Assembly (NCBI RefSeq): GCF_006345805.1
Contig: NC_043012.1
Coordinates: 8,556,001 to 8,620,000 of the forward strand
Direction of reading: 5' to 3'
DNA: 64,000 bases
DNA from: Octopus sinensis
Taxonomy: Eukaryota
Part shown: positions 16,153 through 43,649 of the stretch, one piece after another
Numbering within the stretch: the first letter of the stretch is position 1
Layout of the letters: every line of letters starts with the position of its first letter
Notes under the pieces: model-generated
The model's input: only the letters and a program-made list of their open reading frames with translations
Databases searched by the model: none
What the model was told of the DNA's origin: nothing
Translations under genes and position numbers: made by a program

Positions 16153-16830
16153 AACAACAAACAAGATGAGGACAAATATCTGTTGAATGTAAATAATGCA
16201 ATCTAGTTGTTACTGGATGGAATCTCAGTCTGAATTAGAAAAGATATTTTTCAACAAAAGTGGGTTTTCAACAGGAATGAAAACCTGCAAGAACGAGATA
16301 AGAATATAAGTGTGGTGGTGGGGTACAAAATGTAGCAGGAGGTAGTCATCATCATCATCACCACCACCACCACCACTATCATCATCATCATCAACAACAA
16401 CATTTAATGTTAGTTTTCCATGCTGACATGGGCTGGACAGCTTGACAAGAACTGGCAAAGCCAGGTGTTGCACCAGGTGCCATAGCCTGTTTTGGCTTGG
16501 TTTCTATGGCTGGATGCCCTTCCTAACACCAACCACTTTACAGAGTGTACTGGGTGCATTTTACATGGCACCATCAATAGTGCTTTTTATATGGCACCAG
16601 CACCCACACCAGTGCTTTTTATGTGGAACCTTGGTTTTAGGATCTCAATTCTGCTGTGGCAGGCAGGTCCTCCAATACACATCTCAGTCGTCTATAATTT
16701 CCTTTGAGATCAACCTTCAATATTTTGATAAATCCAAATTTCTTTATAGAGACTGTGTTGTGTCGGTAGAGAAAAAATAGTAAAGTAATAAATATCAGGA
16801 GAGCAGCGATTTACACAACCAGCAAATAAA

Positions 16831-16875
<45 letters not shown>

Positions 16876-17138
16876 CTAAGGAGAGGTAAAAAAAATCATT
16901 AAAAATTTTTAAAAAACGTTCAGATCATGTTGCGAAGAAGTTTGTTTTTCATCCTTCATGGGTTGATATAATTAAAGGCCCAGTAAAGTCTTGAGAACGA
17001 TTTAATTGCAAATTATCCTAGATGTAAACTGAAATAGAAAAAAAAACTGTAAGTATTGCGCAGATTTAGTGGCGGATGAGTTTGAGGTGGGGACATAACT
17101 GGAATGTTACACCGTGAGTGGAAAGTAAAACTTGTTTA

Positions 17139-17186
17139 ATGTTTCTTGACATTAAAACTATTTTATTGTTTCTCTCTCTTTCGAAG
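17139..17186 (+). CDS. FAM172A: FAM172A candidate first coding exon 1a (signal-peptide-like)
   Basis: ATG..MFLDIKTILLFLSLSK, aag|gtaagt, phase 0, in frame with exon 2. Confidence 0.65.
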
Positions 17187-18048
17187 GTAAGTTTATTTTA
17201 TTTCGATGGCTTCGTCTTTAATGCGGCATTCGTTTTTCTCGAAGGTTATAAAAGAAGTTGCCCTGTTATTTCCGTCCTGCACGTTTTTGCGTCGATTTGT
17301 TTAGAAATATTTCTAGATTTCCATTCTTTTAATCGAGTTTCTGGCTTGGTTCGCAATAAACACACACACATATCTGACCTACGCCGTATTAGGGGCTTTG
17401 ATCGATTACCGAACCAAGAGAATAATTAGCAATTAATTGCTCATATCTCAAGGTAATGTTTATATATATTTCCTCGTGTCGCTCCCCCACAACATGCAAC
17501 AACTCAAAGACCATTCCACAGACACTCTGTGGTAAGTAGAAGAGATAAACAACCATTAGACACTGTATTTGGTGTCTGTTTTACTAGTTTAAAGGTTTTC
17601 TTATTGTCTAAGACATTTTTATGGCGCTTCTTCGTTTCCGGGCCCCAACGAAAGGAAAAGATTTAATCTTTTATAGCAATTGTTTTATTTATTTATTTTT
17701 TTGTTGGGATGTCAAGTGAAAGTATTTGGAATGCTAAATTATTACTGTTATACGGCATTCTTACACCTGTCTAGATGGATTGCCTTTCATCCTTTCGGGG
17801 TCAATAAATTAAGTACCAGTTACGCACTGGGGTCGATGTAATCGACTTAATACCTATGTCTGTCCTTGTTTGTCCCCTCTGTGTTTAGCCCCAATGTGGG
17901 CAATAAAGAAATAGGATGTGGTAGCCGAAAATCATGGAACGAGAGCGCGGAGTTGGCGGAGGACAAAAATATAAAAGATTGAATTTTTGTAACAAAATTT
18001 CTTTCACAGAACAAAACAATCGTTGTATTCCTTTCTTCTTCCTTTACC

Positions 18049-18069
18049 ATGAAAGTTCACAGCGATTCC
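18049..18069 (+). CDS. FAM172A: FAM172A candidate alternative first coding exon 1b
   Basis: accATG AAA GTT CAC AGC GAT TCC|gtaagt, phase 0, MKVHSDS. Confidence 0.45.
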
Positions 18070-18695
18070 GTAAGTTTGTTCCGATCAGAGTTTGGAAACA
18101 GGTTTACGAGTAAAGAATTTCCAAATATCTTTAAGACTGTTGACATGCTAGCTGTGATTGGGGCCCGTCGCTAGGGGTAGGGGCTCTGTCCCCCCACCCA
18201 CTATTCAGTGGTGCACCCTCACATTTACAACATACAATTTACGAAAATGTTCCCGCCATACGTTTATTGAAGTCTGACGAACTTTTCTTCTTAAATGAGA
18301 ACGAATAATATATTTTTTTGGAAATAATACAGAAGATGAAACAGAGTGATTGTGAAAAATTCCCTTAGAAAATAATTAGTAGAGGGGAAAATGATATTGA
18401 ATGAAGGGAAAAAAGCAAAAATCGAAAAATATCGACAACAATAACAGCAGCAATGAAAAAAAGCAAAAATAGCGCTGATGAAATCTCGATCTATATTCTA
18501 CGAATGCGCAGAAGAATACCTATACATATGTACCACACACACAAACACATATGCATGTTTATTCATTCGTTTACACTTTATTAACCCTGCTTCTGATCCC
18601 ATCTACACACACGCATATGTATAGGGATTGCTGTTAGTACTGGCGCCATTTAGACCAGATACTGACAACCTTAACATTCCTTGCAAAAAAAAAAA

Positions 18696-19099
18696 GGCGA
18701 TCTTTCGTCTCTAGTAGACCTTTCCGTCGATTTCCGTAAAAAAATTTTTTTTCTACATATGGGCTTGCGGGAACTTTTGAAGTAATGAGAGCGAAAGAGA
18801 CTAAGAGAAAGCGATTGTATGACGAGGGAAGTTCTTTTGAAGTTACCGTGCATGTGAAGCATTGATGTACACGTGTGTGTGTGTGTGTGTTTGATGGGGT
18901 GCGGGAGACAGACAGTATGTTGTGTAAGTGAAGTGCTTCTGTTAGTGTGTGTGAAAGAAAGAGATAACTGAAATTTTTTACTCGGTGTATGTGTATATGT
19001 ATGTATATTACTTCAAAAGTTTCCGCAAGCCCATATGTAAAAAAAAAAAAAATTATTACGGAAATCGACGGAAAGGTCTACTAGAGACGAAAGATCGCC
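18696..19099. mobile_element. MITE with ~92-bp TIRs (GG...CC termini)
   Basis: ggcgatctttcgtctctagtagacctttccgtcgatttccgtaa and its exact reverse complement ending at 19099. Confidence 0.85.
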
Positions 19100-20009
19100 A
19101 AGTCAATTAAACTTCCCAGGGAAAAGAAACTGGTTCACGCGAACATTCAAACATATATATACTTACACACACACACGCACAGATTTTAAAATTAGCTTCA
19201 CTTTAGAAACCCGTTTCGTTAGCTTGAGAATTTGATGTCTTTCTTCGATTTTCATAATTGTATTTTACCATCACAACTTCATTATCTTCTCCGATCAAAA
19301 TCTTGCAATAATAACTTAAGTGTCGCAACAAACATTTTGGCTTGTCTTTGAGAAGAAAGACGGGAGGAAGTCTTTCCAAGTTCCCCGAACACTCAATTAT
19401 TCAAAATAACAACTATTTATAGTTTGCTTTCTTTAAAGTATTTTCTTCTAAATTCTATTTTATTTTGCCTGAACTAACAAAACAAAAAAAAAAATCAAAT
19501 TAAAAAGCCATGAAATGACAGAGATCAATCTTGTCTCTGCTTTGGGTCGGAAATCCTAAAACCTCTAAAACTTGCAAAAATTACGAGATTTCTTCCATTT
19601 CAAATCAACCACAGTTAACTGCATCTGCAACAATACACCATCCTTTAATTTCTTTAGCAGCTGATGTTATACAGCTTATAGAACTTGAAATGTTTCCTAA
19701 ACTTGATTTATCTGCCATGTCAACCAAAATTATCAATGTATCATCCTAAACAATAAATTAAAAAAAAAAAAAGGAAATGCGACTTCTGTGCTTTGTGGTT
19801 CAGTGGCAGACCTTGGTTAGAATTGTTAATTCATTCTAAGGCTGTTTTTTTGCTATTATAGTCATTTTTGTTCATCCCAGAATGATGACAATAGATTTAA
19901 AGTTGTAGGATATAATATACCAACTATTATAAATGCTTTGTCAAAAAGCAAAGATTTTAGCATGCAGGAGAATTCTTTTGCACATGAAAATGCTATGAAA
20001 GTTTGGAAT

Positions 20010-22269: not shown

Positions 22270-22492
22270 TTACTCAGTTCCACAAAACAGAATTTGTCTT
22301 GGAGACATTCTGAAAACAAGTGCCTTATGCAGCCAGAGAATGGTCTGGAACATTCAAGCAAGGAAGATATAAAAATGTCAATTCTAGACAAAACTAGCGA
22401 AAGAAACTCTGGCGATGATGTTTCTTCTGCAGACTGTGAAATGGAAGAAAAAGAAAGAAATTCGCAGAAACTCATGCCAGAATCCACGAAAG
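22270..22492 (+). CDS. FAM172A: FAM172A exon 2 (low-complexity acidic N-terminal region)
   Basis: Polypyrimidine tract then cctcag|; open frame LLSSTKQNLSWRH...PESTK; the only phase-1 donor found is aag|gttcca. Confidence 0.65.
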
Positions 22493-22859
22493 GTTCCAAA
22501 ACTGAAGGGGACTTGAAATTGACATCTTCGAATCAGTGCAACTTGAGCCATAAACAGAAATATAAAAAAAAAATTGTGGTGTAAAACAAATGAAATTATT
22601 TCCTTCGAAAGAATCTGGCAAAATTTTACTAAAAGGTTAGCTCAAACATTTTGAAGGGTGGTTGTCTGCATTTGTGTGAGGGTGGTGTGGAAAGAAGTTG
22701 GTTTCCCAATTAAATGCTTCCAGGTTTTGTGTTCCATTACGTGGCACTTTGCACAAGTGTCTTCTACTATAGCCTCAGGTTGACTAAAGCCTTGTGAGTG
22801 AATTTGGTAGCCTGTTATATGTGTGTGTGTTTGTATATTGTTGGCATCTTTTTGTCTCG

Positions 22860-24388: not shown

Positions 24389-25287
24389 GTTGTGTCTGGC
24401 TTGAAGGGGGCCCTATAATACTGTTGTATTAAAATCATGTCTGGTTTGAAGAGAGCTATGATTTAGTGGCATATTAATGTAGCTCTACGAACATGCAGTT
24501 ATTTATTAAGATGCCAACTTTCCAAAGAGGACAATTGGTTGTTTCATAGTTTGATACTAGGAAAAACCCTTAACTCTCATTGAACTTACTCCACCTAGTT
24601 GTAACTAGGTACCGTGGTGAGGAACAGTGCAACAGAATGATGAGGTACATTGCATTTAAATATGTAAATATGTCTTGTGCTGAGTTATAACAATGTAACT
24701 TCTCAGTAGATGTTGCGAGAGGTAATGTCAATAGAGGCAATGACGAGGCTCAGTTCACTTGCCTGTCAGTAGGTACGATCACTAGATGTTGTAGTGTGGT
24801 TCAGTGTGTATCATTCAATAGCTACCATGAGTGGGTGTAGTCCAGTTTGACACCTGGGAAAAATGCAAGCACAGGACTGCCCTTGCCTGCCATAGCTGCA
24901 CCAGCAGAGGTGCCACTCCCTATAAAGGAGTGTAAGATACTCAGTTGTAAAAAATATAGTGTTTAGTTATGTTGGCTGTGGTGTTTAGCTATGTGACATG
25001 AAGTGTTTAACCATTAACATCTGGTGTTTAGTTCTACAGTTTTTGACTGATATTAATAATAATAAGAGTAAACATTATATTTTCATACTTGCTAGATATC
25101 TACATTATGTTTATGCATTTATTTACTTTCATACTGCCTTATTACTCTCTCTCTATGTATTTGTGATATTTATTTGGTATATATATATGTACTAAATTTA
25201 TTATCACCCTTCGGTCTTCCTGTCTTTCTTCAACATTTTTTCTTTTGTTTTATTTTTTTAATTTCTACTTCTGTATTTATTTCAAAG

Positions 25288-25377
25288 ATCCAAATGTGAT
25301 ATCAACTCCCCAGAACCATAATAAAAGCAAAATGAAGCGAAAATCTTTGGAGTCTTTTAAATATCGTTTCAATGAAA
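25288..25377 (+). CDS. FAM172A: FAM172A exon 3 (copy 1)
   Basis: ttcaaag|, (D)PNVISTPQNHNKSKMKRKSLESFKYRFNE(K), |gtaagt; 90 nt, phase 1-1; aligns to human TLEGFEYAFNEK. Confidence 0.9.
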
Positions 25378-27282: not shown

Positions 27283-27372
27283 ATCCAAATGTGATATCAA
27301 CTCCCCAGAACCATAATAAAAGCAAAATGAAGCGAAAATCTTTGGAGTCTTTTAAATATCGTTTCAATGAAA
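27283..27372 (+). CDS. FAM172A: FAM172A exon 3 (identical copy 2)
   Basis: Exon and splice sites identical to copy 1. Confidence 0.75.
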
Positions 27373-28829: not shown

Positions 28830-28927
28830 AGGGCCGTCTACGACACATTAAAACTGGGAAACCTTTTGAGTTTAACATCAGCAACAATAGAAGGGATAAC
28901 GAGAAGAATTATGAAGAACTAGGAGAG
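28830..28927 (+). CDS. FAM172A: FAM172A exon 4
   Basis: GRLRHIKTGKPFEFNISNNRRDNEKNYEELGE (human GQLRHIKTGEPF..RYEALGE); ag|..|gtaagt. Confidence 0.95.
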
Positions 28928-29304
28928 GTAAGTAGTCATTATAATAGCACCAGCATTTTGGTAGAAGAATTGATAGAGGAGGTGGACGCAGGCGTGAGAG
29001 AGAGGTCGTCAAGTTCAAGACAGACATCTGAGGCAGACATTAAACTAATCATTATAAGAATGGTTTCTAATATTGGCACAAGGCTGACACTTTTAGGAGA
29101 GAGACTAAGTCAATTACATTGACCCTAGTATTCGACTGGTATTTATTTTATTGACCCTAGATGAAAGACGAGGTTGACCTTGGTGGAATTTGAACTCTCA
29201 CCATAATGAGTTGCAAGAACCTCTGCTAAGCATTTTGTTCAACCAAAGCCTTGTGAGTGTATTTGGTAGATAGGAACTGAAAGAAACTCATCACATGTAC
29301 ATAT

Positions 29305-29430
29305 ACGAGGGTATGCTGAAAAGTTCCTGCTTTAAAGGTATTGCAAAAGATCTGGTTGGAGGATCAACCTTCTGAGTTTTTTTACAGGGTTTAGAAAAAC
29401 TGAAGGACCACTGCAATAAGTGGTGTGAAT
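29305..29430. mobile_element. Mariner-derived MITE fragment (a similar one at ~39396-39530)
   Basis: TA-cgagggtatgctgaaaagttcc TIR-like end plus a GLEKLKDHCNKW C-terminal motif. Confidence 0.5.
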
Positions 29431-30293
29431 CTTTTTTACCGAACTGCTAAGTTACAGGGACGTAAATACACCATCGCTGATTGTCAAGCAGCAGTGGGAG
29501 GCAAAAGTAGACACAAAATCACTTGGAAATACACACTCATGTATGCAAGGCTTCTTTCAGTTTCCGTCTACTAAATCCACTCGCAAGGCTTTGGTCAACT
29601 CGAGGCTATAGTAGAAGACACTTGCCCAATGTGCCACTCAGGGGGGCTGAACTCGGAACCATGTGGTTAGGAAGCAAACTCCTTTATTTTATTAAATTTG
29701 CCATAAAGGCAGTACATAGAGTAGAGAAGCTTGCGGGCTGGACATGGACATTAATGAGATGAATGATAATGATGCAAGGATGATAAGGATGGGAGAAGAC
29801 GAAAAGCGCCCGCCGACTTCTGCTTCTCTAAAACGTTCTTTTTTTAAAAACACTGAATGAGGTATTAACCCTCTTACAATTTTATAAAGAGCTCATTACT
29901 AATAAAAACACATTTAATAAGGCGATAAACCTATTACGCACATAAGGCCTCAATCAACTTTCTTGCCTCCCACAGGCTTTCCTGCAGCTGCAAGTTGGGG
30001 GCCCCATAAACAGGATCTATATTCTTCCTTTGAGAAGGAGTCCATTATATCGTAGAAGTTCCTTTCTTCTGGTACCAGAGCCACGTCTGCACCTATGTCC
30101 ACAGTGTGTATGTAGATTGTATATTTAGGGTTGTATTTATGCTCGTGTTTCCTTATTTTTGTCATCCTCATTAGTAATGTCACCATCATTATCAATACAA
30201 TTATTATTGTCATCTTCACCACCAACTACCATCATCATCACCACTTCCACCATTGCCATCACTATTACTATTGTTGTCGTCATCGTCTTTCAG

Positions 30294-30359
30294 GCTGTCA
30301 CAGAACATATCTACAATATGTTACAAATTGAGATGAAACTGGAAAAAGTCTATGTACCG
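30294..30359 (+). CDS. FAM172A: FAM172A exon 5
   Basis: AVTEHIYNMLQIEMKLEKVYVP; tttcag|..|gtaagt; 66 nt. Confidence 0.95.
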
Positions 30360-30589
30360 GTAAGTACGGAACCTCTGAATATTACATCAAATTGTTATCC
30401 TCTCAACTTGCCACCTTGTCACATTGTCGACTTTTCAACTTGCCAAACAGTTAGAATGGTCAGTGACTTGGTCACAGATATGTCCCTTTATTATAACATT
30501 TGAAATCATGCTTTTACATTTTTTTTCTCTTTGACCCTTTAGCATTTTAACCAGCCATATCCGGCTGAAATATTCTACTTGTTTTATGT

Positions 30590-30864
30590 TCGCACGTAAA
30601 AAGCACCATCCGATCGTGGCCGTTTGCCAGCCTCGTCTGGCACCTGTGCCAGTGGCACGTAAAAAGCACCATCCGATCGTGGCCGTTTGCCAGCCTCATC
30701 TGGCACGTAAAAAGCACCCACTACACTCACAGAGTGGTTGGCGTTAGGAACGGCATCTAGCTGTAGAAACATTGCCAGATCAGACTGGGCCTGGTGCAGC
30801 CTTCTGGCTTCCCAGACCCCAGTTGCACCGTCCAACCCATGCCAGCATGGAAAGCGGACGCTAA

Positions 30865-30891
<27 letters not shown>
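30590..30891 (+). mobile_element. Repeat family C copy inserted after a piggyBac-type MITE end
   Basis: VNTR units and (GAT)n tail. Confidence 0.8.
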
Positions 30892-30895
<4 letters not shown>

Positions 30896-30962
30896 GTGTT
30901 TTCTTGGCTTTGGTCTGTTTTGTTAATGTAACTTTTTTTCTTTTATTTTATTGTCTTCACAG

Positions 30963-31090
30963 ATTAATCGAATTGGTTTGGAACCACAAAGTTTCATTTT
31001 CCAAAGTAAAGATGCCTTGACAAACCCTCACAAATTACTGCTGCTAGTCCATGGTTCTGGGGCTGTTCGTGCTGGTCAGTGGGCTCGTAG
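30963..31090 (+). CDS. FAM172A: FAM172A exon 6
   Basis: [42 protein letters not shown]; Arb2-domain [12 protein letters not shown] motif. Confidence 0.97.
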
Positions 31091-31999
31091 GTCAGTGGCC
31101 TTCTATGTCTTATTTTGTCCATTTCTGTCTTCACTTAGCCTTACTTCTTACGATTAAAGATTTTTGTAAACAAATTATTGCGGCCTGTTTCTCCAGTTAT
31201 AGTATGGGTTGACTAGAGCTGCAAATCTCTGTATGTAAAAATTTCTATCAGAACATGACACTGTAATTACTCTATGACGCAATCTACAAACTGCTATGTG
31301 GTCATTTAACTTACTAGAAATAAGTCTTAAATATCTCAAATCACAGGTAAAAGAGGTAAAAGCTTGCTGGATTATTTAGTTTGAGATAAACTATGTGAAA
31401 GGAAACAGGATGGTTGTAGCTGGAATGTCTTTGATCAGGACTCTGTTTGACCAGAGGGATTAGACAATAACACTTAACAACAAATGGCTTTTGTTCTCTT
31501 TGTTTAATCTGGATTATCTGAGTATATTGTTAATTTAGATTACCAACCAGATTACCGAGTATAAAACGAGTTTTTTTAATATATTCAGTAATAAGAGAGT
31601 TAAGTGTGGAACAATAGTTTACGAAAGCAGTTCAGTCTGTGTAGAAGTAAGATAAATATTGGTTTCAAATTTTGGCACAAGGCCAGCAATTTTGAGGAAG
31701 GGGTTTAAACAATTGCACCAACCTCAGGAAAGGAAACTACAATATTTTCCAGTATACAAGTTAAAATTTTTCAGTCCCAAATTTACAACCAATTTTAACT
31801 TGTATACTGGAAAATATTGTAGTTTCCTTTCCTTGCTTATAGCTATTGAAACACAAACACGACAATAAAGGAATGGTTAAGCAGCCAATTGGTAGTCATT
31901 AGAGTGTCGGATAGAGTACCTCACAGTATTTGTTCCGAGGTCAGCTTTACTTTTCGTCCTTTCAGGATGTTATAAAACCCAAACTCGAATATCAAAGTT

Positions 32000-32680
32000 T
32001 AAAAAGTTTTAATTGACTAAAAATACAGCAATATACAATACAAACGAAGATTGCTAAATTGTAAGCAAAACCAAACTTCAACACAATAACAGTTTTATGC
32101 AGCGAGTTGCTGCATTCTCGACTAACTAAAATCAACACTGAACATATCGTGCTGCAAACAGAACAGAACTCTGCACAGTTGCACTGCAGGCATATAACAG
32201 CAATCGAGACAATCAAAATCACAACACAGGGTCAATGAAAATGTGCCAATCTGGGATGATGGATTGGTGACACTGTTAGAGAGTTGCTATGCAGTATCAG
32301 CTGCAGCTCTTTGTATTGTGACAGTGTATACTGCAATGATACCTGTGGCAAACAGTATCACCTGAGGTTGGTGGCCTTTTCCTTCAATACACATTAGCTG
32401 TATGGAGAGGGAAGACTTTTGTTATTGGGCAGCTCAGTATTACTGGAAAATAATATTACTTTGGCCTTCACATACATGTGCAACTGCATAATCAACCTTG
32501 GTCAGTGGAGGCCCTACAAGAGGAATGATCTGACTGCCATCAAATATTGGTATTATCTCAGTGATATCGATCAATGAGGAATTAGTCTTATTGCTTTTGA
32601 TTCTCAGAGGCATAAATGGTGTGAAATGAATTGAGTTGAAGACAATGTTGCAAGAGCATTTAGATCCATCCAACAATATT
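32000..32680 (-). pseudogene. Highly decayed Tc1/mariner (maT/DD37D-like) transposase remnant
   Basis: VCEGQSNIIFQ*Y*AA resembles VCEGRPY.FQQD.APA; many stops. Confidence 0.4.
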
Positions 32681-32695
32681 CCTTGATTTTAGTGA

Positions 32696-32925
32696 TTAAC
32701 CCCTTAGCCTTTAAACCGGCCATATCCGGCCAAAAGTATTCTGCTTGTTTTATGTTCAAACTGGCCATATCTGGTCTCTCAGACTAACCCTACAATATCG
32801 TTTTAAAAATGAACAGTTACCTCATCAAAATCTCATAACTACAAGATTAATGAATGATTAGTTCAAAACAATGTGGATGAAAAAGCATTAGTTTTGGCAG
32901 AATAATGTGAACACTAAAGGGTTAA
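32696..32925. mobile_element. piggyBac-type MITE family G (also 44636-44847, 51960-52180)
   Basis: ttaa|cccct..agcctttaaac...ctaaaggg|ttaa. Confidence 0.8.
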
Positions 32926-33007
32926 TGTTTCTAACCACTATTGGAACCATATTCAGTAACACTCATAGAATCTGTTACAGTGAATGATGTAACTTTCTCT
33001 TTGCTAG

Positions 33008-33140
33008 ACTCATCATCAATGACTGCTTAGACAGTGGTTCACAAATGCCATTCATCAAGAGAGCTGTCCAATCCGGTTTTGCTGTTCTCGTCTTAAACAC
33101 AAACTTAAACAGAAGTAAAAAAATTGGAAATAAAATCAGG
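33008..33140 (+). CDS. FAM172A: FAM172A exon 7
   Basis: (R)[44 protein letters not shown]; ctag|..|gtgaga; 133 nt. Confidence 0.95.
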
Positions 33141-33369
33141 GTGAGACATCTGCGAGTTTTGTTTGTTTGCTTTTATGCTTCCTGAGGTTAGCAATGTGTG
33201 TGTTAGGGTGCCTGTATGCGCGTGTGTGTGTGGCTATCTTGCGTATATGTGTGTGTTGTGGGGAGATGCATGGAGGTGTGAGTGGGATAGGGGTGACAGG
33301 ACTCAGGGGTTCGAAGGTATTGGGTGCTTGTGTGGAGTGGGAAGGTGTGTATGAGTGCATGTGCAGTGA

Positions 33370-34515
33370 TTAACCCTTTTGATACCAAACTACCCAATTC
33401 AACCCTCTAATTCTATGTTGCAACCTCCCTGTTTTAGATTGACCTTAATTAAAACCTTTTATCAAAACGTTGTGTTAATTAGTTCCAAACACCACCTTAA
33501 TAATAACCTCAGGGCACTGAACTTTTTGGAGGAGATGACAAAAGATCGAGACATATGGCGCCTTCCTATACTCAAAAAGACCCATCCTCTTCAGCAGAAG
33601 TGTTATGGTTGCTTCCCCTGGTGAAGAGAATTTACCTGGTTGAGTCCTGTGCTAGTACCACATTAAAAAAGCACCCAACACACACTGTAAAGGGGTTGGT
33701 GTTAGGAAGGGCATCCAACTGTAGAAATCAAACTAAATCAGACTGGAACGTGCTGCAGCTTTCCAGTTGCCAGCCCTGGTCAACCCGTCCAACCCATGCT
33801 TGCATGGAAAATGGACATTACAGAATAATGATCTCACCTGGCAAGCCAAGTCAGACCATAACCTGTGGCCTATGCCAGGGGTGTAACCAGCCCACTTATG
33901 CATACCTTTCCTTCATTGGACACTAAACTCTGCTTGCGAAGACCTGTTGAGGCAATCAAAATCAAATTTGATGACTGGTATCTGTGCCAGTGGAGTGCTA
34001 AGAGCATCATCCGAGTGTGATCGTTGCCAGAGCAGCTGACTGGCTTCCCTGCCAGTGGCATGTAAAAAGCACCATTCAATTGTGGTCGTTACCAGCGTCG
34101 CCTTATTGGCACTTGTGCCAGTGGCACGTGAAAAAACATTCGAGCGAGATCGTTGCCAGTGCCGCTGGACTGGCTCCTGTGCAAGTGGCACGTAAAAAAC
34201 ACCATTTGAGCATGGCTGTTGCCAGTACCACCTGACTGGCCCTCATGCTGGTGGCATGTAAAAGCACCCACTACACTCTCAGAGTGGTTGGCATTAGGAA
34301 GGGTATCCAGCTGTAGAAACTCTGCCAGATCAGATTAGAGCCTGGTGCAGCCATCTGGTTCGCCAGTCCTCAGTGAAATCGTCCAACCCATGCCAGCATG
34401 GAAAGCGGACGTTAAACGATGATGATGATGATTTTATTAAGTTCTTCATTGTTTTCAAAATTAATTGAAACAATGTCAGTGTATTTTAACAGAAAAATCG
34501 TGGCAAAAAGGTTAA
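33370..34515. mobile_element. MITE family F interrupted by a ~920-bp RTE 3'-end/family C insertion (33512-34432)
   Basis: The MITE halves match the intact copy at 59800; the insert begins LRALNFLEEMTKDRDIWR and ends in (GAT)n. Confidence 0.75.
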
Positions 34516-34734
34516 AATCTTCCTGTACTCTATAGTTAAACTTACTATTAATTACTTTTGTTCTCACTCAAAATTTTACTTTTATCAAAATGTTATCGTT
34601 TATTCTGTAGTTAACGCATACTTCTGTGTACTGTAGCAACATAGTTCAGTGTGTTCACAGCAGTTTAACACAGTTCAGTCTCTAGTTAACACACCCCAAT
34701 AATCTCTCATGTATCTTAGTTCATGTGATAAGGT

Positions 34735-34985
34735 GGTGAGCTGGCAGAATCATTAACATTAAGGCGGCGAATTGGCAGAAATGTTAGCACGCCGGGCGAA
34801 ATGCTTAGCAGTATTTCATCTGCCGCTACGTTCTGAGTTCAAATTCCGCCGAGGTCGACTTTGCCTTTCATCCTTTCAGGGTCGATAAATTAAGTACCAG
34901 TCACGCACTGGAGTCGATGTAATTGACTTAATCTCCTTATTTGCCCCCTCTTATGTTTAGCCCCTTGTGGGCAATAAAGAAATAA
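34735..34985 (+). mobile_element. SINE family A (tRNA head, central gcctttcatcctttcggggtcgataaattaagtacc domain); also 17780, 36922, 41255, 48130, 58860(-), 62822
   Basis: B-box gagttcaaattcc; conserved central domain resembling the Meta/Sauria-type SINE domain. Confidence 0.85.
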
Positions 34986-35594
34986 GAATCATTCACATGC
35001 CAGCTAAAATGTTTGGCAGCATTTCTTTCTGGCTTTGCTATTGAGGTTAATTTTGTCTTTCATCCTTTTGCGATTGATAAATTGAGAGCCTGTTGAGCAT
35101 TGGGGTTGATGTAATGAACATCTCCCACCCTTCAAAACTGTCAGCCTTGTGTGAAAAATTAGGAGGAATTATTAGTTCATGTGGTCACCTAGTGTGTGTT
35201 ATACATGTTATGAGTACATGTCACAGGAGGTGTTAGTGTTTTTACTGAATTGGAAATGTAGTTTAATGAAATAAATGTTAACAATTAGTCTGGTGGTGGT
35301 GGTTGTGTGTGTAGAGAGAAGGCATGGCTATGTGAAATAGGTGTAGACATGGTTCCAGGTTCAGCCCCACTGCATGGCACCTTGGACAAGTGTTTTTTAC
35401 TATAGCGTCATGCTGACCAAAGCCTTGAGTGGATTTGGTAGATGAAAACTGAAAGAAGCTGGTCATATATGTATACGTGTATCTTTAGGTCTGTGTTTGT
35501 CCCCCATCACCACTTGACAACCAGTGTTAGTGTGTTTACATCCCCTTAAAAGGATAAATACCAGGCTTTAAAAAAAAGTACTGCAGATCAATTC

Positions 35595-35764
35595 CTCGAG
35601 GTGGTGCCTTTAGTCAAAGAAATAGACCCAAGGACTTATTCTTTGTAAGCCTTGTTCTTATTCTGTTGGTCTCTTTTGTCAAACTGCTAAGTTATGGTGA
35701 TGTAAAAACAACAGCATCGGTTGTCAAGCAATATTGGGGGGCAAACACAGACACACAGACATAT

Positions 35765-35834
<70 letters not shown>

Positions 35835-36001
35835 CATACGACGGGCTTCTTTCAGTTTCCATCTACCAAATCCATTCACAAGGCTTTGGTCAGCCTGAGT
35901 CTATAGTAGAAGACACTTACCCAAGGTGCCATGCAGTGGAACTGAACCCGGAACCATGTGGTTGGTAAGCAAGCTACTTACCACACAGCCACTCCTGCAC
36001 C
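35595..36001 (-). mobile_element. SINE family B, inverted relative to the copy at 35318-35575
   Basis: Reverse complement of 21427. Confidence 0.85.
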
Positions 36002-36042
36002 TAATTCTTTAATTTGATATCTTTTATTCTGTGATGTTGCAG

Positions 36043-36162
36043 GGAAACGGTAGTGCTTTAGAACACCTGTTGTATGTGTGGGACAACTTTGTGGTGGCAG
36101 CGAAAGCGAAACATATTGCTTTCGTCTGTCACAGTTACGGTGGAGTGGCAACTGCCAAACTG
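36043..36162 (+). CDS. FAM172A: FAM172A exon 8 (nucleophile elbow HSYGG)
   Basis: GNGSALEHLLYVWDNFVVAAKAKHIAFVCHSYGGVATAKL; cag|..|gtgagt. Confidence 0.97.
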
Positions 36163-37323
36163 GTGAGTAATTGTAACTTCTATATTATTATTATTATTAT
36201 TATTAAATGGTGAGCTGTCAATCATTAACATGTTGGGCAAAATGTTTAGCAGTATTTCGTCCATCTTTACATTTGAAACTATTATTATTATGTCAAGAGC
36301 AGTGCATGCCGTCAAAGAGACCCTGGGATAAAATAATAGAAGCCCAGTATACCCATCATGACTACCCATCTGATAAGGGTACAGAAAGTACATGCATCAC
36401 AACCATATGTGTGCAACATGGTGATCTCATATCAAGATAAACAGCACATGACCTTGCAGGTGGGGCCCAGTTAGAATTTTCTGCAGGTTGTGTAGCTTAT
36501 CCTGCTCAAAAAGGTTCCTGAATAAGGGTTATTTAAAGATGTTGAACGAAACACTCCTGTTTCTAGAGGTAAATTATTCAAACCCCAAAGAATTCCTCTC
36601 AACACATGGCTATGATGCTCCCTCACTATTTCTGCTTGTGATCAAAGTGCTTTGGGGTCAGCTTGCTACACTCACTCACAATATATGAGATCGTTTCGTT
36701 TTTGCTTCCACACATCCTACAAAGGGGCGATTCACTGTTATTGTTGTTGTTAAATTGGAAAGCAATATTTAACACTGTAAGTGCAAAGTTCAGAAGGTTT
36801 GTCTTTGCCTGTCAGCCTAAAAGATGCATTAAATTAGAAAATAATCAAGTTCTAATCAAATATACCACTAAAATGTGTGACTTTATGCCTATATCATAGA
36901 TGGTTATTATTGCATTATGAGGGCAGTGAGCTGGCAGAATCATTAGCATACCGGGCGAATGTGCTTAGCAGCATTTTGTCTGCCAGTATGTTCTGAGTTC
37001 AAATTCCACCGAGGTCAACTTTGCCTTTCTTCCTTTTGGGGTTGATAAATTAAGTACCAGTGAAACATGGGGTCAATGTAATCAACTAGTCCCTTCCCCC
37101 AAAATTTCAGGCCTTGTGCCTATAGTAAAAAGGGTTATTATTGCATTATAAATGTACCTCACACAATCTTCTACATGATACACCAACATGTCTTACACAC
37201 ACCACATGTAGCCTTCTCTCTTCATGTCCATGTTTCACTCCCATACAATACACATTCCTTCTGCTGTCTCCAACAGGCTTAACAGTCAGCATCTCCTTCC
37301 ATTACCAAACATGGTATCTTAGT

Positions 37324-37610
37324 CCAGTGGTTCTCAACTGGGATTCATCATGTAAGATTTTTGGGAGTCCGTGCAACAAAATAGTAAATTGGGGATCCAA
37401 AATAGCTGTTTAAGAGCCCATGAAAAAATGTTGCTTTTAGATGTATGTCTTGAAAGAAACAGCTGGGTTTCTTCCTCTTATGTTTTACATAGTTCGGCCG
37501 ACACAAAGTTACTGTGTGAAAGACAAAATAGTAAATTTTTAGACATTGAATGGCTTTGAGGGGTCCATTAGAATAAAAGTAATGAAAGGGGGTCATAGAT
37601 AAAAAAACAA
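37324..37610. mobile_element. hAT-type MITE remnant
   Basis: cagtggttctcaactggg terminus; a similar end at ~7440. Confidence 0.45.
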
Positions 37611-37991
37611 TCCCTGTCTTAGTCCTTTTGAAATGCCCTCCTTTCAGGTATTCTCAAACTCCACACTGCTGATTTCCTGTGCAAAATCAGGATAACTGTG
37701 GCCCATCTGAGAAATGAGCCCTGCTAATTGTTGTGGTTGCTGCAGTGAATGTCATTAGCAATTCCCCATTGCAATCATTTTCATGAGGCGTGGCTAAACA
37801 TGCCATTTGGTCTGGGGTGTATGACCCCTGCCTTACTCCCTCCCCACCATCTGCTGGTGCGTAATCCACCTTCTCCACTTTCCTTTTTCTTTGTTTCCTT
37901 GGTTAGATATTTACAGGGCTTTTTTGTTTTCCCTCGATAATTTGGTCTTATTTGTTTTAATATTTTTTTCTTTCTTTTCTTCATGTAAAAA

Positions 37992-38556
37992 TCTTTATAT
38001 ATAAAAGTGAGGTTGTGTGCTGTCTGTCTCCTATGATTTAGATTCCTAACTACTCCCACATTTTGCGGTGCAGTTTAACCAAAACTGGGTGTCTTATAGT
38101 CGTGATTCATATCGAGCCCTTCTGGATTGTTGTTATAAGGGTTATTTAAAGATGTTGAACGAAACACTCATGTTTCTAGAGGTAAATTATTCAAACCCCA
38201 AAGAATTCCTCTCAACACATGGCTATGATGCTCCCTCACTATTTCTGCTCGTGATCAAAGTGCTTTGGGGCCAGCTTGCTACACTCACTCACAATATATG
38301 AGATCGTTTCGTTTTTGCTTCCACACATCCTACAAAGGGGCGATGAGTCTACGATTTTAAAAAAATTTACCATCATTTTTTCGCTATTATATAAGGGAAG
38401 TAACTCTCTAAAAATGTCTACTATGAGTCAACGATTTAAATAAAAAATTTACCATCATTTTTTTCCATTTTTTTGCTATGTTTTGGCTATAACTCTAAAA
38501 ATGCTTGTATAGTTATTTCCCTTACAAACCTGAGCAACACCGGGCGATACTGCTTG
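37992..38556 (+). mobile_element. Non-autonomous Helitron (copy of 1938) carrying a 219-bp foreign patch
   Basis: A|TC start, hairpin, CTTG|T end; 38135-38344 copies 36522-36731. Confidence 0.85.
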
Positions 38557-38868
38557 TATATTAATAAGAATAAAGTCCATTGCAAACAACAAAAATAAAT
38601 GATTCCATATTCATTCAATTGAAAAGAAAAAATCAATTCCAATCAATTTTTTTGTATTGCATATTTTCATTTTCCTTCAGGTACCACTGCAATTATGCAT
38701 TCTTTACTTGTATTGTTGCACATACAATATTGCATCAATGACATCATATCTACATATTGCATGTGTTTTAACTGTTGAAGGGAGGAGTGGTGATGATGAT
38801 GACGAGGGTAGTGGGGTGGTGGTCGATGTCCCTTCAGTGTTGTTCAAGATCCTTTTCTGTCATTTCAG

Positions 38869-38976
38869 GCCAACAAGAGAAGGGATTTCTTATCAAGGAT
38901 TTCTGCCGTGGCTTTTACCGATTCCATGCCTGACAATTATATCAATGATGCTGATATTAAAGAATTCTTCAAAAAG
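38869..38976 (+). CDS. FAM172A: FAM172A exon 9
   Basis: ANKRRDFLSRISAVAFTDSMPDNYINDADIKEFFKK (human VTAVALTDSVH); donor aag|gttctc. Confidence 0.9.
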
Positions 38977-39054
38977 GTTCTCTCTATGAGTCTTCCTATA
39001 ATACATGTGTGTGTGTGTGCATATATATATATATATACATCAAAATGTATATCA

Positions 39055-39372
39055 AATGGAAATAGTAATCGTGATGCCAGTGGCATGTAAAAAGCACCAT
39101 CCGAACGTGGCTGATGCCAGCGCCACCTTCACTGGCTTCTGTGCCGGTGGCACGTAAAAAGCACCAACCGATCGTGGCCGCTGCCAGCCTCCCCTGGCAA
39201 GTAAAAAGCACCCACTACACTCTCGGAGTGGTTGGCGTTAGGAAGGGCATCCAGCTGTAGAAACACTGCCAGATCAGACTGGAGCCTGGTGCAGCCCCTG
39301 GCTTCCCAGACCCCGGTCGAACCATCCAACCCGTGCTAGCACGGAAAATGGACGTTAAACGATGATGATGAT
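39055..39372 (+). mobile_element. Repeat family C copy
   Basis: VNTR plus tail. Confidence 0.8.
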
Positions 39373-40831
39373 ATATATATATATATATTATAATATGAGG
39401 AGGTGCTGTAAAGTTCCTGGCTGTAGGTAAAAGAAAATACAGGAGGATCAGTTATGATTTTATTCAAAATATTCCCCTCTTGGATTCACACACTTATTAC
39501 AGTGGTTGTTCAATTTTTCTAAGCCCTTCAAAAAAAAAAAAAAAAAAAAAATCTCAGAAGGTTCGATCTCCAACCAGGTATCCTTAAAGCCAGGAACTCT
39601 TCAGCCCCCCCCCCCCAATCTCTTTGTATCATACTTTTGTAATGCTTATTCATTCACACTGTTTGGAATTAATCATGCATTATATAGTAGCTTAAAGATT
39701 TCAATGATGTGATTGCTTATTTTTAGAACGGTGTTGTTAGGTAGGTGTGAGAGGCTGGATCTGGCCAGTTTGAACATAAAACAGAATATTTGAGCCAGAT
39801 ATGACTGGTTTTAAATTTGTAGAACCTTACAATCTAGACTAAAATTAATAAATATATATATATATGCATATATTATATATATATATCTGTGCCGGTGGCA
39901 TGTAAAAAGCACCCACTACACTCGCGGAGTGGTTGGCGTTAGGAAGGGCATCCAGCTGTAGAAACTCTGCCAGATCAGACTGGAGCCTGGTGCAGCCCCT
40001 GGCTTCCCAGACCCCGGTGGAACCGTCCAACCCGTGCTAGCGTGGAAAGCGGACGTTAAACGATGATGATGATGAAATAAATACATCTTATTTTAGGTAC
40101 AAGTGTGGCTGTGTAATCAAGAAGTATGTTTCCTAACCACATGGTTTAAGGTTCATTCCCACTGCAAGGCACCTTGAACAAGTGTCTTCTACTATAGCCA
40201 TGAGCTGACCAAAGCCTTGTGAGTGGAAACTGTAAGCTTGTTATAAACATATGTGTGTTTGTGTATTACTGTCTCCTTGTATTGACATCATGTGTTAGTT
40301 GTAGATGTGTATCACTGTCATACAGACTTCATCTCCAATCTTTCATGCAGATATGTCCTGCTCGAGGAAAATATTACCTTGCTTGGAAATATGAAGGTTG
40401 GTGACAGGAAGGGCATCCAGCTGTAGAAAATCTGCCTCAAACAAATACCATGGCTTGGATGAGATTTGTTAAAACAATGATAATGAATAAAAGCACAACA
40501 CGAATAGAACTGTTGTGTCTGGGGAGAGTCATTCTCTTTTAGTGTCTTATTATTTAACACACTCACCAGTAAAATTTCCACATATTTCTTATTTTTATTC
40601 TCTAAAATTTTCGTTCGATGTTGCAACCTTTTCAATAGTCTTTACTGGTGAGTGTGTTAAATAATAAGGCACTAAAAGAGAATGACTCTCCCCAGACACA
40701 ACAGAATATGCTTCAACACACGAACTCATATAAAGAATCTTGCAAACCAAATCCTAAAACGAAATACAAATAGAATTGTTTTTGTAAAAAATTTGATGTT
40801 AATTGTTGTCTGAATTTGTGTTTATTTGTAG

Positions 40832-40916
40832 AAAAGTCGCAATTGGGTCACCAGTAAAGAACCTATTGATACAGTGGTAAACTCCTTCAATGGGACAGTC
40901 CCTAAAGTATCAGCAG
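40832..40916 (+). CDS. FAM172A: FAM172A exon 10
   Basis: KSRNWVTSKEPIDTVVNSFNGTVPKVSA(G) (human NWVSSSEPLD..PRVSAG); 85 nt. Confidence 0.95.
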
Positions 40917-42116
40917 GTAAGATATTGACTTCTGTTTGTTCAGATAATACCACTTCTTTCTCTCTGTCTATAAGGTTACTGCTATGCCCATTTTCATATA
41001 TAAACCATTTTGTCAAAGGAAATCTGTGTGCATGTGTGGTTGCTTGAGCATCTAAGAAATAGCAGCCAGCCAAATCTACCTCAAATTCTGTCCAATTGTC
41101 TTGATCCTTCCATTACCAATATCTCTGTTGAAATACACTGACTTTTGTGGCAATTAATTTTGAAAATAACGAAGGATTTAGTAAAATAACCTTATTCTTA
41201 TTAAGCTGGTGTTTGGAGCATAAATTAGCATAAAATTTTGATGAAAGGCTTTCTCGTTAGCACGCCGGGCGAAATGCTCAGCAGTATTTCATCTGTCGCT
41301 ACGTTCTGAGTTCAAATTCCGCCGAGGTCAACTTTGCCTTTCATCCTTTCGGGGTCGATTAAATAAATACCAGTTACGCACTGGGGTTCGATATAATCGA
41401 CTTAATCAGTTTGTCCCTTCTGTGTTTAGCCCCTTGTGGGTAGTAAAGAAATAGGTTTTCACTCAGATCACTTTTAAAATAAAGTTTATATGATAGAACA
41501 AAGGTTAATCTCAGATAGGGTCAGGGTATTAAAAGGGTTAAGGCAGAGACTATATTAGGACAAGCTAATGATGAGGTTTGTGTGTGTATGGTTGCCTGCA
41601 TTTGCAAAAAATAGTAGCCAGATCTATCTCCCTACTGTCGTAAGAGAAGGCAGACACATTGGATAGTGGACTCTTTCCCTTGTTTCTTTCACTGGATTGC
41701 AGCCAAGCTGGAGCAGCACCTTGAAAATGTGCATTCAGTATCACCCCCCGTACTTAGGTATCTAATATTTATTGGTTTCTGTTAGTTCAGTTACTGAACA
41801 TAAAGAATACCATCTTGCAAGCAGTGTCAATATAAAGACAGAGGCAAAAATCATGCTACCATACACACCTAGCAATCAGTCTCTTATCATTGTTTCAGGA
41901 CAACTCAAACACACTTTGAAGAATTCTTTGTCAAGATTAAAAACATGTCTGGGACATTGTTAGTATCCATGAGCAGATGATGAATCGAGATCCAATTTAT
42001 GGCATCCAGCCATAGAAGTCATGAATGGAACAGACGTTATATGATGTATGTGTATACACACAGTGTATATCATTCTGTATAGCTTACTTAACATGGTTAT
42101 ACTGTAATTTGTTAAA

Positions 42117-42475
42117 GGCGTAGGAGTGGCTGTGTGGTAAGTAGCTTGCCTACGAACCACATGGTTCCGGGTTCAGTCCCACTGCGTGGCACCTTGGGCA
42201 AATGCCTTCTACTATAGCCTCGGGTCGACCAAAGCCTTGAGAGTGGATTTGGTAGACGGAAACTGAAAGAAGCCCGCCGTATATATGTATATGTTTGTGT
42301 TGCTTGACAACCGATGCTGGTGTGTTTACGTCCCCATAACTTAGTTCGACAAAAGAGACTAATAGAATAAGTACTAGGCTTACAAAGAATAGGTCCTGGG
42401 GTCGATTTGCTCGACTAAAGGCAGTGCTCCAGCATGGCCACAGTCAAATGACTGAAACAAGTATAAGATTAAAAG
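42117..42475 (+). mobile_element. Full-length SINE family B
   Basis: Matches 21427. Confidence 0.9.
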
Positions 42476-43003
42476 TACAGAAAAGCATCCTGTATATCTA
42501 ACCTAATGTGGACATGCTGCAGAAAGCTATAACAGCACAGTTTTCATCTTGGGGAAACATCTTATATAGACATACTGTGCTAAAAGCAGTGTATAGTATG
42601 TCTACTGTGTGCTGTAAGAAACACAATGCTATTTTCAACTAATACTACTTCTGCTACTAATGAATTTTGAAACCAGTCCAACAGCTTTTTGTGACACAAG
42701 TGATATGTTAATCACTATTTTTTTCTATAATAGTAGAAGCAAAATTTCTCTAAGCATGCTTTTGAATATGGATTCTTGCTACTGATGATGTGCAAAGAGA
42801 GAGAGAGAGAGAGATCCAGATTTAACAACCCCCACCATGCCTGCTGGTCACTTTTTGTCTGCTTTTTAGTACTGTTTGTCTAGACAAGATGCTTTCTCAA
42901 AACAAGTATTTCAGTTTTCTTATAGTATAACCACATTAAAATGCTATTCTGAACTAATATGGCTTCCAAAACCGGGAGAGGTGGAATTTATATATATATA
43001 TAT

Positions 43004-43392
43004 TCTCTTTACTCTTTTACTTGTTTCAGTCATTTGACTGTGGCCATGCTGGAGCACCACCTTTAGTCGAGTAAATCGACCCCAGGACTTATTCTCTGTA
43101 AGCCTAGTACTTATTTTATCGGTCTCTTTTGCCGAACCACTAAGTTACAGGGACGTAAACACACCAGCATTGGTTGTCAAGCGATGTTGGGAGGACAAAC
43201 GCAGACACACAAACATACATATATATATACACACGACGGGCTTCTTTCAGTTTCCATCTACCAAATCCACTCACAAGGCTTTGGTCGGCTCGAGGCTATA
43301 GTAGAAGACACTTGCCCAAGATGCCACACAGTTGGACTGAACCCGGGACCATGTGGTTGGTAAGCAAGCTACTTACCACACAGCCACTCCTA
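43004..43392 (-). mobile_element. Full-length SINE family B (inverted partner of 42117)
   Basis: Reverse complement, roughly 90% identical. Confidence 0.9.
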
Positions 43393-43536
43393 TATATTTT
43401 ATATAAAGGGGGTGGGGGTTAAGCTACAATCAATGCCAGGCTGTCTAATTCAGTGATTTGTTATGTCTTAATTTATTACCTTGTTTCTTGTTAGAAAACC
43501 TTTTTTTAAAAAATGCTTTGTTCCTTTCTTTAACAG

Positions 43537-43649
43537 GACATACAAAACATGAAATGACTTCCTGGACAAGTTTCCATTCAATATTTAAATACCTGAATGA
43601 AAAGATTCCAGATCCCAGTTCTAAAACTGAATCTAAAGCTGAACTTTAA
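43537..43649 (+). CDS. FAM172A: FAM172A exon 11 (last)
   Basis: HTKHEMTSWTSFHSIFKYLNEKIPDPSSKTESKAEL* (human RHELTSWKSFPSIFKF..KHEEL*). Confidence 0.97.

What the first reader, a model, noticed from the sequence alone, without database searches (positions are those of the whole stretch)
17139..18069. Two in-frame alternative first exons may switch FAM172A between ER-targeted and nucleo-cytoplasmic forms
Seen: exon 1a (17139-17186, AAG|GTAAGT) gives MFLDIKTILLFLSLSK+LLSST, a hydrophobic signal-peptide-like N-terminus. Exon 1b (18049-18069, accATG, TCC|GTAAGT) gives hydrophilic MKVHSDS. Both are phase 0 and splice in frame to 22270, and both lie in CpG-richer promoter-like sequence. Established: human FAM172A is annotated with a signal peptide and HEEL, yet is described as a nuclear AGO2-associated splicing regulator. 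Inference: promoter choice could resolve this dual localisation.
Basis: partly seen in the sequence, partly recalled or inferred. Interest (0 to 1): 0.72.

Follow-up and report, generated by a model that had tools for sequence, protein, structure and literature searches.

The report
Octopus FAM172A 5' end, frame broken
This is the start of the Octopus sinensis FAM172A/ARB2A gene: the first proposed exon is a real, already-annotated exon coding a signal-peptide-like start. The second proposed exon is unproven, a one-base deletion in this assembly stops either reading frame from reaching the protein's conserved domain, and the isoform idea is already published for mouse.

Summary
The window is Octopus sinensis CM016874.1 (L007 is identical to window 16590-49649). 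It carries the FAM172A/ARB2A homologue on the + strand.

Exon 1a is real. It is the annotated coding first exon in O. vulgaris and in O. bimaculoides X1, and it sits on a conservation peak.

Exon 1b has no support beyond its motifs:
- No retrieved protein model uses it.
- Its GT donor is GA in O. bimaculoides.
- Its conservation is only at background level.
- 10 of 24 GTAAGT sites on this strand have an in-frame ATG by chance.

In this assembly a 1-nt deletion in exon 2 (A10TT, against A10TTT and A9TTTT in the two relatives) ends both proposed ORFs at TAA 22582-22584. They are 120 and 111 aa and stop before the Arb2 domain. The RefSeq CDS starts at ATG 22590.

The idea that isoforms with and without the signal peptide explain ER versus nuclear localisation is already stated for mouse (PMC10205598). 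O. bimaculoides RefSeq X1/X2 already show forms with and without the hydrophobic N-terminus.

Verdict: ordinary and largely known, with low interest.

The parts
16751..19500 (.). CpG-undepleted, promoter-like zone that holds both candidate first exons
   Evidence: CpG o/e is 0.81-1.32 in 500-nt windows, against a window median of 0.39.
17139..17186 (+). Coding part of exon 1a: MFLDIKTILLFLSLSK, donor AAG|GTAAGT, phase 0
   Evidence: It is the CDS start of O. vulgaris CAI9733967/66 and of O. bimaculoides XP_014783221. The ATG and donor are invariant in the three species, and identity to O. bimaculoides is 0.92-0.98 here.
17970..17977 (+). TATA-like TATAAAAG, 79 nt upstream of the 1b ATG
   Evidence: Read and invariant in the three-species alignment A2. 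This is a motif only, with no evidence of function.
18049..18069 (+). Candidate exon 1b ORF MKVHSDS (unverified), donor TCC|GTAAGT, phase 0
   Evidence: The ATG is conserved, but the donor is GTAAAG in O. vulgaris and GAAAGT (no GT) in O. bimaculoides. Identity to O. bimaculoides is only at background level, 0.84-0.87. No retrieved protein model uses it.
22270..22635 (+). Exon 2 (acceptor cag|TTA, donor AAAAG|gttagc)
   Evidence: tblastn of P0001, three-species alignment A3 and exact reconstruction of XP_029646485.
22564..22584 (+). Frame-breaking lesion: A10TT (one T fewer than O. vulgaris A10TTT and O. bimaculoides A9TTTT), plus G>T at 22582, giving stop TAA 22582-22584 in the 1a/1b frame
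   Evidence: Adding one T in a script gives a 451-aa ORF collinear with O. vulgaris.
22590..22592 (+). ATG used as CDS start by the O. sinensis RefSeq models (MKLFPSKESGK...)
   Evidence: P0121 and P0123. The window reproduces P0123 exactly with GT-AG introns.
25288..25377 (+). Exon 3, copy a
27283..27372 (+). Exon 3, copy b (inside a 2.0-kb tandem duplication)
   Evidence: It is included in RefSeq X1 (P0121).
28830..43649 (+). Remaining coding exons: 28830-28927, 30294-30359, 30963-31090, 33008-33140, 36043-36162, 38869-38976, 40832-40916 and 43537-43649. The protein ends ...SKAEL*
   Evidence: Exact match to XP_029646485.1. Arb2 domain, Pfam E=3e-48.

Best explanation
The region is the 5' end of the Octopus sinensis ARB2A/FAM172A homologue, lying in one CpG-undepleted promoter zone.

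Exon 1a (17139-17186) is the genus-conserved first coding exon. Its 16 codons give a short hydrophobic, signal-peptide-like N-terminus that splices to exon 2 at 22270. Together with the C-terminal KAEL, a working KDEL variant, this specifies an ER-directed long form (451 aa in O. vulgaris, 450 aa in O. bimaculoides).

A form without the hydrophobic N-terminus also exists in the genus (O. bimaculoides X2, starting at the internal Met MQPENG). It most likely comes from a transcript whose 5' exon has no in-frame ATG, or from leaky scanning past the weak-context 1a ATG (tttaATGt). It probably does not come from the 7-codon '1b' ORF.

In this reference assembly a 1-nt deletion at an A10/T-run junction in exon 2 puts exons 1a and 1b and most of exon 2 out of frame with the Arb2 domain. 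That is why RefSeq starts the CDS at 22590. I infer that this deletion is more likely a homopolymer consensus error than biology.

Shown: the gene identity, exon 1a and its junction, the frame break, and the conservation pattern.
Inferred: signal-peptide function, ER residence, the origin of the form lacking the hydrophobic N-terminus, and the nature of the indel.
For: - Identity of the window: 100% identical to GCA_006345805.1; exact XP_029646485.1.
- Gene family: (Arb2, 3e-48).
- Exon 1a: orthologue CDS starts MFLDIKT/MFHDIKT at the homologous ATG; 95% column identity, invariant ATG and AAG|GTAAGT; conservation peak.
- Frame break.
- The RefSeq start ATG at 22590 is the 9th ATG of a 1a- or 1b-initiated mRNA. 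A real frameshift would therefore cripple translation of a widely conserved gene.
- Octopus form without the hydrophobic N-terminus: P0125.
- A hydrophobic N-terminus is common in orthologues (67 of 125 models), and 58 of 125 end in xxEL.
- It is transcribed in a decapodiform cephalopod: 9 RNA-seq contigs.
- KAEL is an efficient ER motif, and human C5orf21/FAM172A is ER-localised (PMC2140024).
- Mouse isoform-based explanation: PMC10205598.
Against: - No RNA-level data for O. sinensis could be reached.
- The h-region of 1a is only 9 uncharged residues (TILLFLSLS, max KD9 2.24; 2.76 in the relatives). That is short for a signal peptide, and SignalP could not be run.
- The indel could be real. 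Argonauta hians also has the conserved start of exon 2 out of frame with its annotated CDS.
- Exon 1b does have a conserved ATG in a good context (accATGa) and a conserved TATA-like box upstream, so it cannot be excluded.
Confidence: 0.72

Rival explanations
1. Exons 1a and 1b are both genuine, mutually exclusive first exons with their own promoters. With the exon-2 indel being an assembly error, they yield an ER-targeted form (MFLDIKT...) and a nucleo-cytoplasmic form (MKVHSDS...).
For: - Both are phase 0 into 22270.
- 1b has accATGa, a GTAAGT donor and a conserved TATAAAAG 79 nt upstream.
- The CpG-undepleted zone spans both exons.
- O. bimaculoides has an annotated isoform lacking the hydrophobic N-terminus.
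Against: - No retrieved protein model begins MKVHSDS or MKVNSDS.
- O. bimaculoides lacks the GT at the 1b donor, and its form without the hydrophobic N-terminus starts at MQPENG.
- The O. vulgaris donor is weakened to GTAAAG.
- Conservation at 1b is at background level.
- 42% of GTAAGT sites on this strand show the same ATG-plus-open-frame pattern.
Confidence: 0.2
2. The frameshift is real. O. sinensis makes only the 328/358-aa proteins from ATG 22590, without the hydrophobic N-terminus. Exons 1a and 1b and most of exon 2 are then a 5' leader carrying a long dead-end upstream ORF.
For: - RefSeq annotated it this way without a LOW QUALITY flag.
- Argonauta hians shows an analogous loss of frame continuity and also lacks a C-terminal xEL.
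- dN/dS of exon 2 looks relaxed between O. vulgaris and O. bimaculoides (about 11 amino-acid changes plus one 3-nt indel).
Against: - The lesion is a single base at an A10/T2-3 homopolymer junction, the classical long-read consensus error (inference from general knowledge of such assemblies).
- Eight ATGs, including a 111-120-codon ORF, precede 22590 in either mRNA.
- The sister species O. vulgaris is intact with 98.4% exon identity, and the only two other exon-2 differences between the two species are synonymous in frame 0.
- KAEL is retained.
Confidence: 0.25
3. '1b' is not a first exon but a 60-nt cassette exon (18010-18069) spliced between 1a and exon 2, using the conserved acceptor tttctttcacag|AAC.
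For: The acceptor-like site is invariant in the three species. The 60 nt are open and in frame in O. sinensis: NKTIVVFLSSSFTMKVHSDS.
Against: O. vulgaris has a 1-nt insertion inside this stretch, making it 61 nt and out of frame. O. bimaculoides lacks the donor GT. No protein model contains this peptide.
Confidence: 0.05
4. The hydrophobic peptide coded by exon 1a is not a cleavable signal peptide. It is too short or weak, so the long form is not ER-lumenal, and KAEL is incidental.
For: The h-region is 9 residues, interrupted by K16, and S15 in O. sinensis lowers hydrophobicity. Decapodiform orthologues keep a hydrophobic N-terminus but end NQAM/NQSM, without xEL.
Against: A hydrophobic N-terminus recurs across phyla, and 29 of the models combine it with xxEL. 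Human FAM172A with its native N-terminus is ER-localised.
Confidence: 0.3

Closest known systems
Mouse/human FAM172A (ARB2A) isoforms: 417-aa signal-peptide form versus 371-aa predominant nucleo-cytoplasmic form (Sallis et al. 2023, PMC10205598; Raykhel et al. 2007, PMC2140024)
   Same: Same gene family (45% identity over the Arb2 region). Both have a hydrophobic N-terminus plus a KDEL-like C-terminus (HEEL in human, KAEL in octopus). Both have annotated isoforms with and without the hydrophobic N-terminus.
   Different: Octopus lacks the roughly 49-residue vertebrate insert with the bipartite NLS and CK2 site. The octopus N-terminal extension (exon 2, about 120 aa) is not alignable to vertebrates. 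The h-region is shorter.
Octopus bimaculoides RefSeq XP_014783221 (X1) / XP_014783229 (X2) and O. vulgaris CAI9733967/66
   Same: Orthologous locus with the same neighbours (GRIM-19 upstream, tetraspanin downstream). Same exon 1a and same 1a>exon 2 junction.
   Different: Their exon 2 is in frame throughout. O. sinensis has the 1-nt deletion. O. bimaculoides has a single exon 3 and no GT at the '1b' donor.
Generic dual targeting by alternative first exons or alternative initiation
   Same: A targeting peptide present or absent at the N-terminus of an otherwise identical protein.
   Different: Here only the form with the peptide is documented at this locus. The second promoter and first exon are conjectural.

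Membership tests
FAM172A/ARB2A (Arb2-domain protein) | Arb2 domain (PF22749) over most of the protein | tested here: met
   Pfam E=3e-48, residues 34-274 of the window-encoded 328-aa protein. Best hits are named FAM172A/ARB2A.
FAM172A/ARB2A (vertebrate type) | Classical bipartite NLS plus CK2 loop splitting the Arb2 domain | tested here: not met
   BLASTP against a primate orthologue shows a 49-residue gap exactly at the NLS insert.
Sec-type N-terminal signal peptide | n-region, h-region of 7-15 hydrophobic residues, and c-region with small residues at -1 and -3 | tested here: inconclusive
   The 1a form has max KD9 of 2.24 (2.76 in relatives) and a 9-residue uncharged run. The 1b form has max KD9 of 0.21. 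No SignalP was available.
KDEL-like ER retrieval signal | C-terminal tetrapeptide accepted by KDEL receptors | tested here: met
   The protein ends KAEL. KAEL fails PROSITE [KRHQSA]-[DENQ]-E-L, but it is an efficient ER motif and all KXEL variants bind ERD21 (PMC2140024). Function in octopus was not tested.
Alternative first exons giving in-frame N-terminal isoforms | Each first exon reads in frame through to the shared functional domain | tested here: not met
   Both ORFs stop at 22582-22584 in this assembly. The feature would be met if one T were present, as in O. vulgaris.
Alternative first exons giving in-frame N-terminal isoforms | Splice donor of each first exon conserved in related species | tested here: not met
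   The 1a donor is invariant. The 1b donor is GTAAGT, GTAAAG and GAAAGT in the three species.
Alternative first exons giving in-frame N-terminal isoforms | Independent transcription start and observed junctions (CAGE, RNA-seq) | not testable with these tools
   No Octopus transcript data could be reached.

The most novel reading that the evidence does not exclude
ARB2A/FAM172A has an ancient, bilaterian-wide two-form design: an ER form with a signal peptide and xEL, and a cytosolic/nuclear form. In Octopus the second form would be driven by a separate TATA-type promoter at about 17.97 kb (exon 1b). Lineages such as O. sinensis (frameshift) and Argonauta (frame loss plus loss of xEL) would be natural knock-outs of the ER form only.
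Probability: 0.12. Interest if true: 0.45.

Novelty: already known. Interest (0 to 1): 0.22.

Why it matters
If it were true as proposed, it would extend to molluscs the isoform-based explanation for why FAM172A is seen both in the ER and in the nucleus. That would point to an ancient dual-compartment role for a gene linked to CHARGE syndrome.

As things stand, the practical value is different:
- The O. sinensis reference probably carries a homopolymer indel that truncates the annotated FAM172A protein by 123 residues, and this deserves correction.
- The ER-type termini (hydrophobic N-terminus plus KXEL) are conserved in Octopus even though the vertebrate NLS is absent. That cautions against transferring the nuclear AGO2-import role to cephalopods by name alone.

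Tried and rejected
1. A protein search with the 1b + exon 2 peptide found nothing, not even P0001, because of the limits of the word index. It is uninformative.
3. Look-ups of P0123 and P0125 returned nothing on record. Only the longest product per gene is stored, so no UTR or isoform exon coordinates could be obtained.
4. An Rfam scan of 15-24 kb gave only sub-threshold mir-297 hits on TA/CA repeats. There is no structured RNA explanation.
5. A BLAST of the 1a/1b region against the Argonauta locus found no homologous first exon. A motif scan upstream gave only unconvincing candidates.
6. The decapodiform transcript contigs have collinear 5' ends, so they give no sign of alternative first exons.
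7. PMC5789929 (Bélanger 2018) is not held in the library.

Full report
**1. What is at the coordinates**

- An ATG at 17139 opens 16 codons (MFLDIKTILLFLSLSK) that end at AAG|GTAAGT after 17186.
- An ATG in an acc context at 18049 opens 7 codons (MKVHSDS) that end at TCC|GTAAGT after 18069.
- At 22270 a long pyrimidine tract and cag| precede TTACTCAGT... (LLSSTKQ...).
- Both donors are phase 0, so both join 22270 in frame.
- The CpG remark is also correct. 500-nt windows between 16751 and 19500 have CpG o/e of 0.81-1.32, while the window median is 0.39. This is one continuous CpG-undepleted zone rather than two separate islands.

**2. Which gene and which genome**

A locating tblastn and then real orthologues show a FAM172A/ARB2A gene on the + strand from about 17.1 to 43.65 kb.

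The window reproduces O. sinensis RefSeq XP_029646485.1 residue for residue, with canonical GT-AG introns. The exons are 22590-22635, 25288-25377, 28830-28927, 30294-30359, 30963-31090, 33008-33140, 36043-36162, 38869-38976, 40832-40916 and 43537-43649.

Locus L007, from GCA_006345805.1 CM016874.1, is identical to window 16590-49649. Pfam gives Arb2 at E=3e-48. The neighbours are GRIM-19/NDUFA13 upstream and a tetraspanin downstream on the minus strand, in all Octopus loci fetched.

**3. Exon 1a is real and already annotated**

The two O. vulgaris models (CAI9733967/66, 451 aa) and O. bimaculoides RefSeq X1 (XP_014783221, 450 aa) begin MFLDIKTILLFLSLLK|LLSSTKQ... and MFHDIKT... respectively. 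Their CDS starts fall on the homologous ATG.

The ATG and the AAG|GTAAGT donor are invariant in the three species. The block around exon 1a is the conservation peak of the region, at 0.92-0.98 identity to O. bimaculoides against about 0.8-0.9 nearby. The 17186>22270 junction is therefore established by orthologous gene models.

**4. Exon 1b is unproven**

Evidence in its favour:
- The ATG and its good context (accATGa) are conserved.
- A TATAAAAG at 17970-17977 is invariant.

Evidence against it:
- The donor is GTAAGT only in O. sinensis. It is GTAAAG in O. vulgaris and GAAAGT (no GT) in O. bimaculoides.
- Identity here is at background level, 0.84-0.87.
- A 1-nt indel lies 12 nt upstream of the ATG in O. 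vulgaris. That fits non-coding sequence and also rules out a conserved cassette-exon reading.
- None of the retrieved protein models starts MKVHSDS.
- The pattern carries no statistical weight. GTAAGT occurs 24 times on this strand (21 expected), and 10 of those 24 have an open in-frame ATG upstream. One of them, at 18894-18923, lies in the same intron.

**5. The reading frame is broken in this window**

Frame 0 from 22270 ends at TAA 22582-22584 (...KQKYKKKIVV*). The Arb2-coding continuation (KKNCGVKQMKLFPSKESGKILLK|D...) is in frame +2.

The three-species alignment shows the cause. The window has A10TT, where O. vulgaris has A10TTT and O. bimaculoides has A9TTTT. There is also a G>T change at 22582. 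The two proposed isoforms are therefore dead-end ORFs of 120 and 111 aa here. This is why RefSeq starts the O. sinensis CDS at ATG 22590.

Adding one T in a script restores a 451-aa ORF collinear with O. vulgaris.

I infer that an assembly consensus error is more likely than a real frameshift (about 70:30), for these reasons:
- The lesion is a single base at a homopolymer junction.
- ATG 22590 is the 9th ATG of either mRNA.
- The sister species is intact at 98.4% exon identity.
- The other two exon-2 differences between the two species are synonymous in frame 0.

A real loss cannot be excluded. Argonauta hians keeps the exon-2 acceptor and about 20 homologous codons, but these are also out of frame with its annotated CDS, and its protein ends TQHV rather than xEL.

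**6. How it most likely works**

The long form has a short hydrophobic N-terminus. Its maximum 9-residue Kyte-Doolittle mean is 2.24 in O. sinensis and 2.76 in its relatives, and the uncharged run is 9 residues. The 1b N-terminus scores 0.21.

Hydrophobic N-termini occur in 67 of 125 orthologue models from many phyla, and 58 of 125 end in xxEL (HEEL, KSEL, KEEL, KDEL and others). All six Octopus models end KAEL.

From Raykhel et al. 2007 (PMC2140024):
- The -3 position of the motif tolerates every residue except proline.
- All KXEL variants bind ERD21.
- KAEL (human MSRB3) is an efficient ER motif.
- HA-tagged human C5orf21 (= FAM172A, HEEL) is ER-localised.

An ER-directed long form is therefore plausible in Octopus, although signal-peptide function could not be computed here.

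A form lacking the hydrophobic N-terminus is annotated in O. bimaculoides (X2, starting at the internal Met MQPENG). Since the 1b donor is absent there, that form must arise from some other 5' exon without an in-frame ATG, or from a different donor that puts the 1b ATG out of frame. Leaky scanning past the weak 1a ATG (tttaATGt) is a further route. The specific 7-residue 1b N-terminus is not needed for it and is not conserved.

The nuclear side is inference only. Octopus lacks the vertebrate insert that holds the bipartite NLS and CK2 site.

**7. Comparison with what is known**

Sallis et al. 2023 (PMC10205598) describe three mouse isoforms. [quoted passage not shown] The proposed resolution of dual localisation by N-terminal isoforms is therefore already in the literature. 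The Octopus long form, and an Octopus form without the hydrophobic N-terminus, are already in RefSeq and ENA annotations.

What remains new is small: a candidate second promoter and exon that lacks support, and a probable reference error.

**8. Verdict**

- Observation: partly confirmed.
- Interpretation: partly supported in spirit, not as coded in this sequence.
- Novelty: already known.
- Interest: low (0.22).

RNA-seq junction counts and a read pile-up over 22564-22576 would settle both open points.

Noticed in passing
window 24424-28418 (exon copies 25288-25377 and 27283-27372): A 2.0-kb tandem duplication (97-100% identical) duplicates the 90-nt, frame-neutral exon 3. O. sinensis RefSeq X1 includes both copies in series. 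O. vulgaris also has two copies (R/Q difference), each used by one model. O. bimaculoides has one copy. It is therefore a real duplication specific to the O. vulgaris-complex lineage, and possibly a nascent mutually exclusive exon pair.
   Followed up: partly
window 22564-22584: A 1-nt deletion at an A10/T-run junction, plus a G>T change, relative to two sister species. It truncates the annotated O. sinensis protein by 123 N-terminal residues and is probably an assembly consensus error.
   Followed up: yes
window 17104-17139: An 11-codon upstream ORF (MLHREWKVKLV*) whose TAA overlaps the exon-1a ATG (TAATG). It is intact in all three Octopus species. It matters only if transcription starts upstream of 17104.
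   Followed up: no
window 19500-19740: An intron-1 block that is 95-98% identical to O. bimaculoides, more conserved than exon 1b. It holds a 37-codon minus-strand ORF (MADKSSLGNISSSISCITSAAKEIKGWCIVADAVNCG) with no Pfam hit. Further conserved blocks lie at 17540-17680 and 18200-18300.
   Followed up: partly
window 18700-19100 and 17780-17916: An insertion of about 400 bp is present only in O. sinensis. A SINE-like element of about 135 bp is shared with O. vulgaris but absent at this site in O. bimaculoides, with copies elsewhere in the loci.
   Followed up: no
L008 9919-10216 (Argonauta hians): The exon-2 acceptor and its first ~20 codons are conserved (LTDSTQPNFPWNPDSDQCL). That frame stops after 39 codons, and the annotated CDS starts in another frame. 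The protein also lacks a C-terminal xEL.
   Followed up: partly
window 6504-6710 (+); 51684-51911 and 63195-63455 (-): Neighbouring genes: a GRIM-19/NDUFA13 exon upstream and tetraspanin exons downstream on the minus strand. The synteny is conserved in O. vulgaris and O. bimaculoides.
   Followed up: no
window 124-1063 (-) and 58892-59030 (+): Tandemly repeated units of about 183 bp that give near-identical open frames (TQRGQTRTDNGIKSITSTPVR...). The same unit is scattered elsewhere in the window. It is probably a SINE or satellite family.
   Followed up: no
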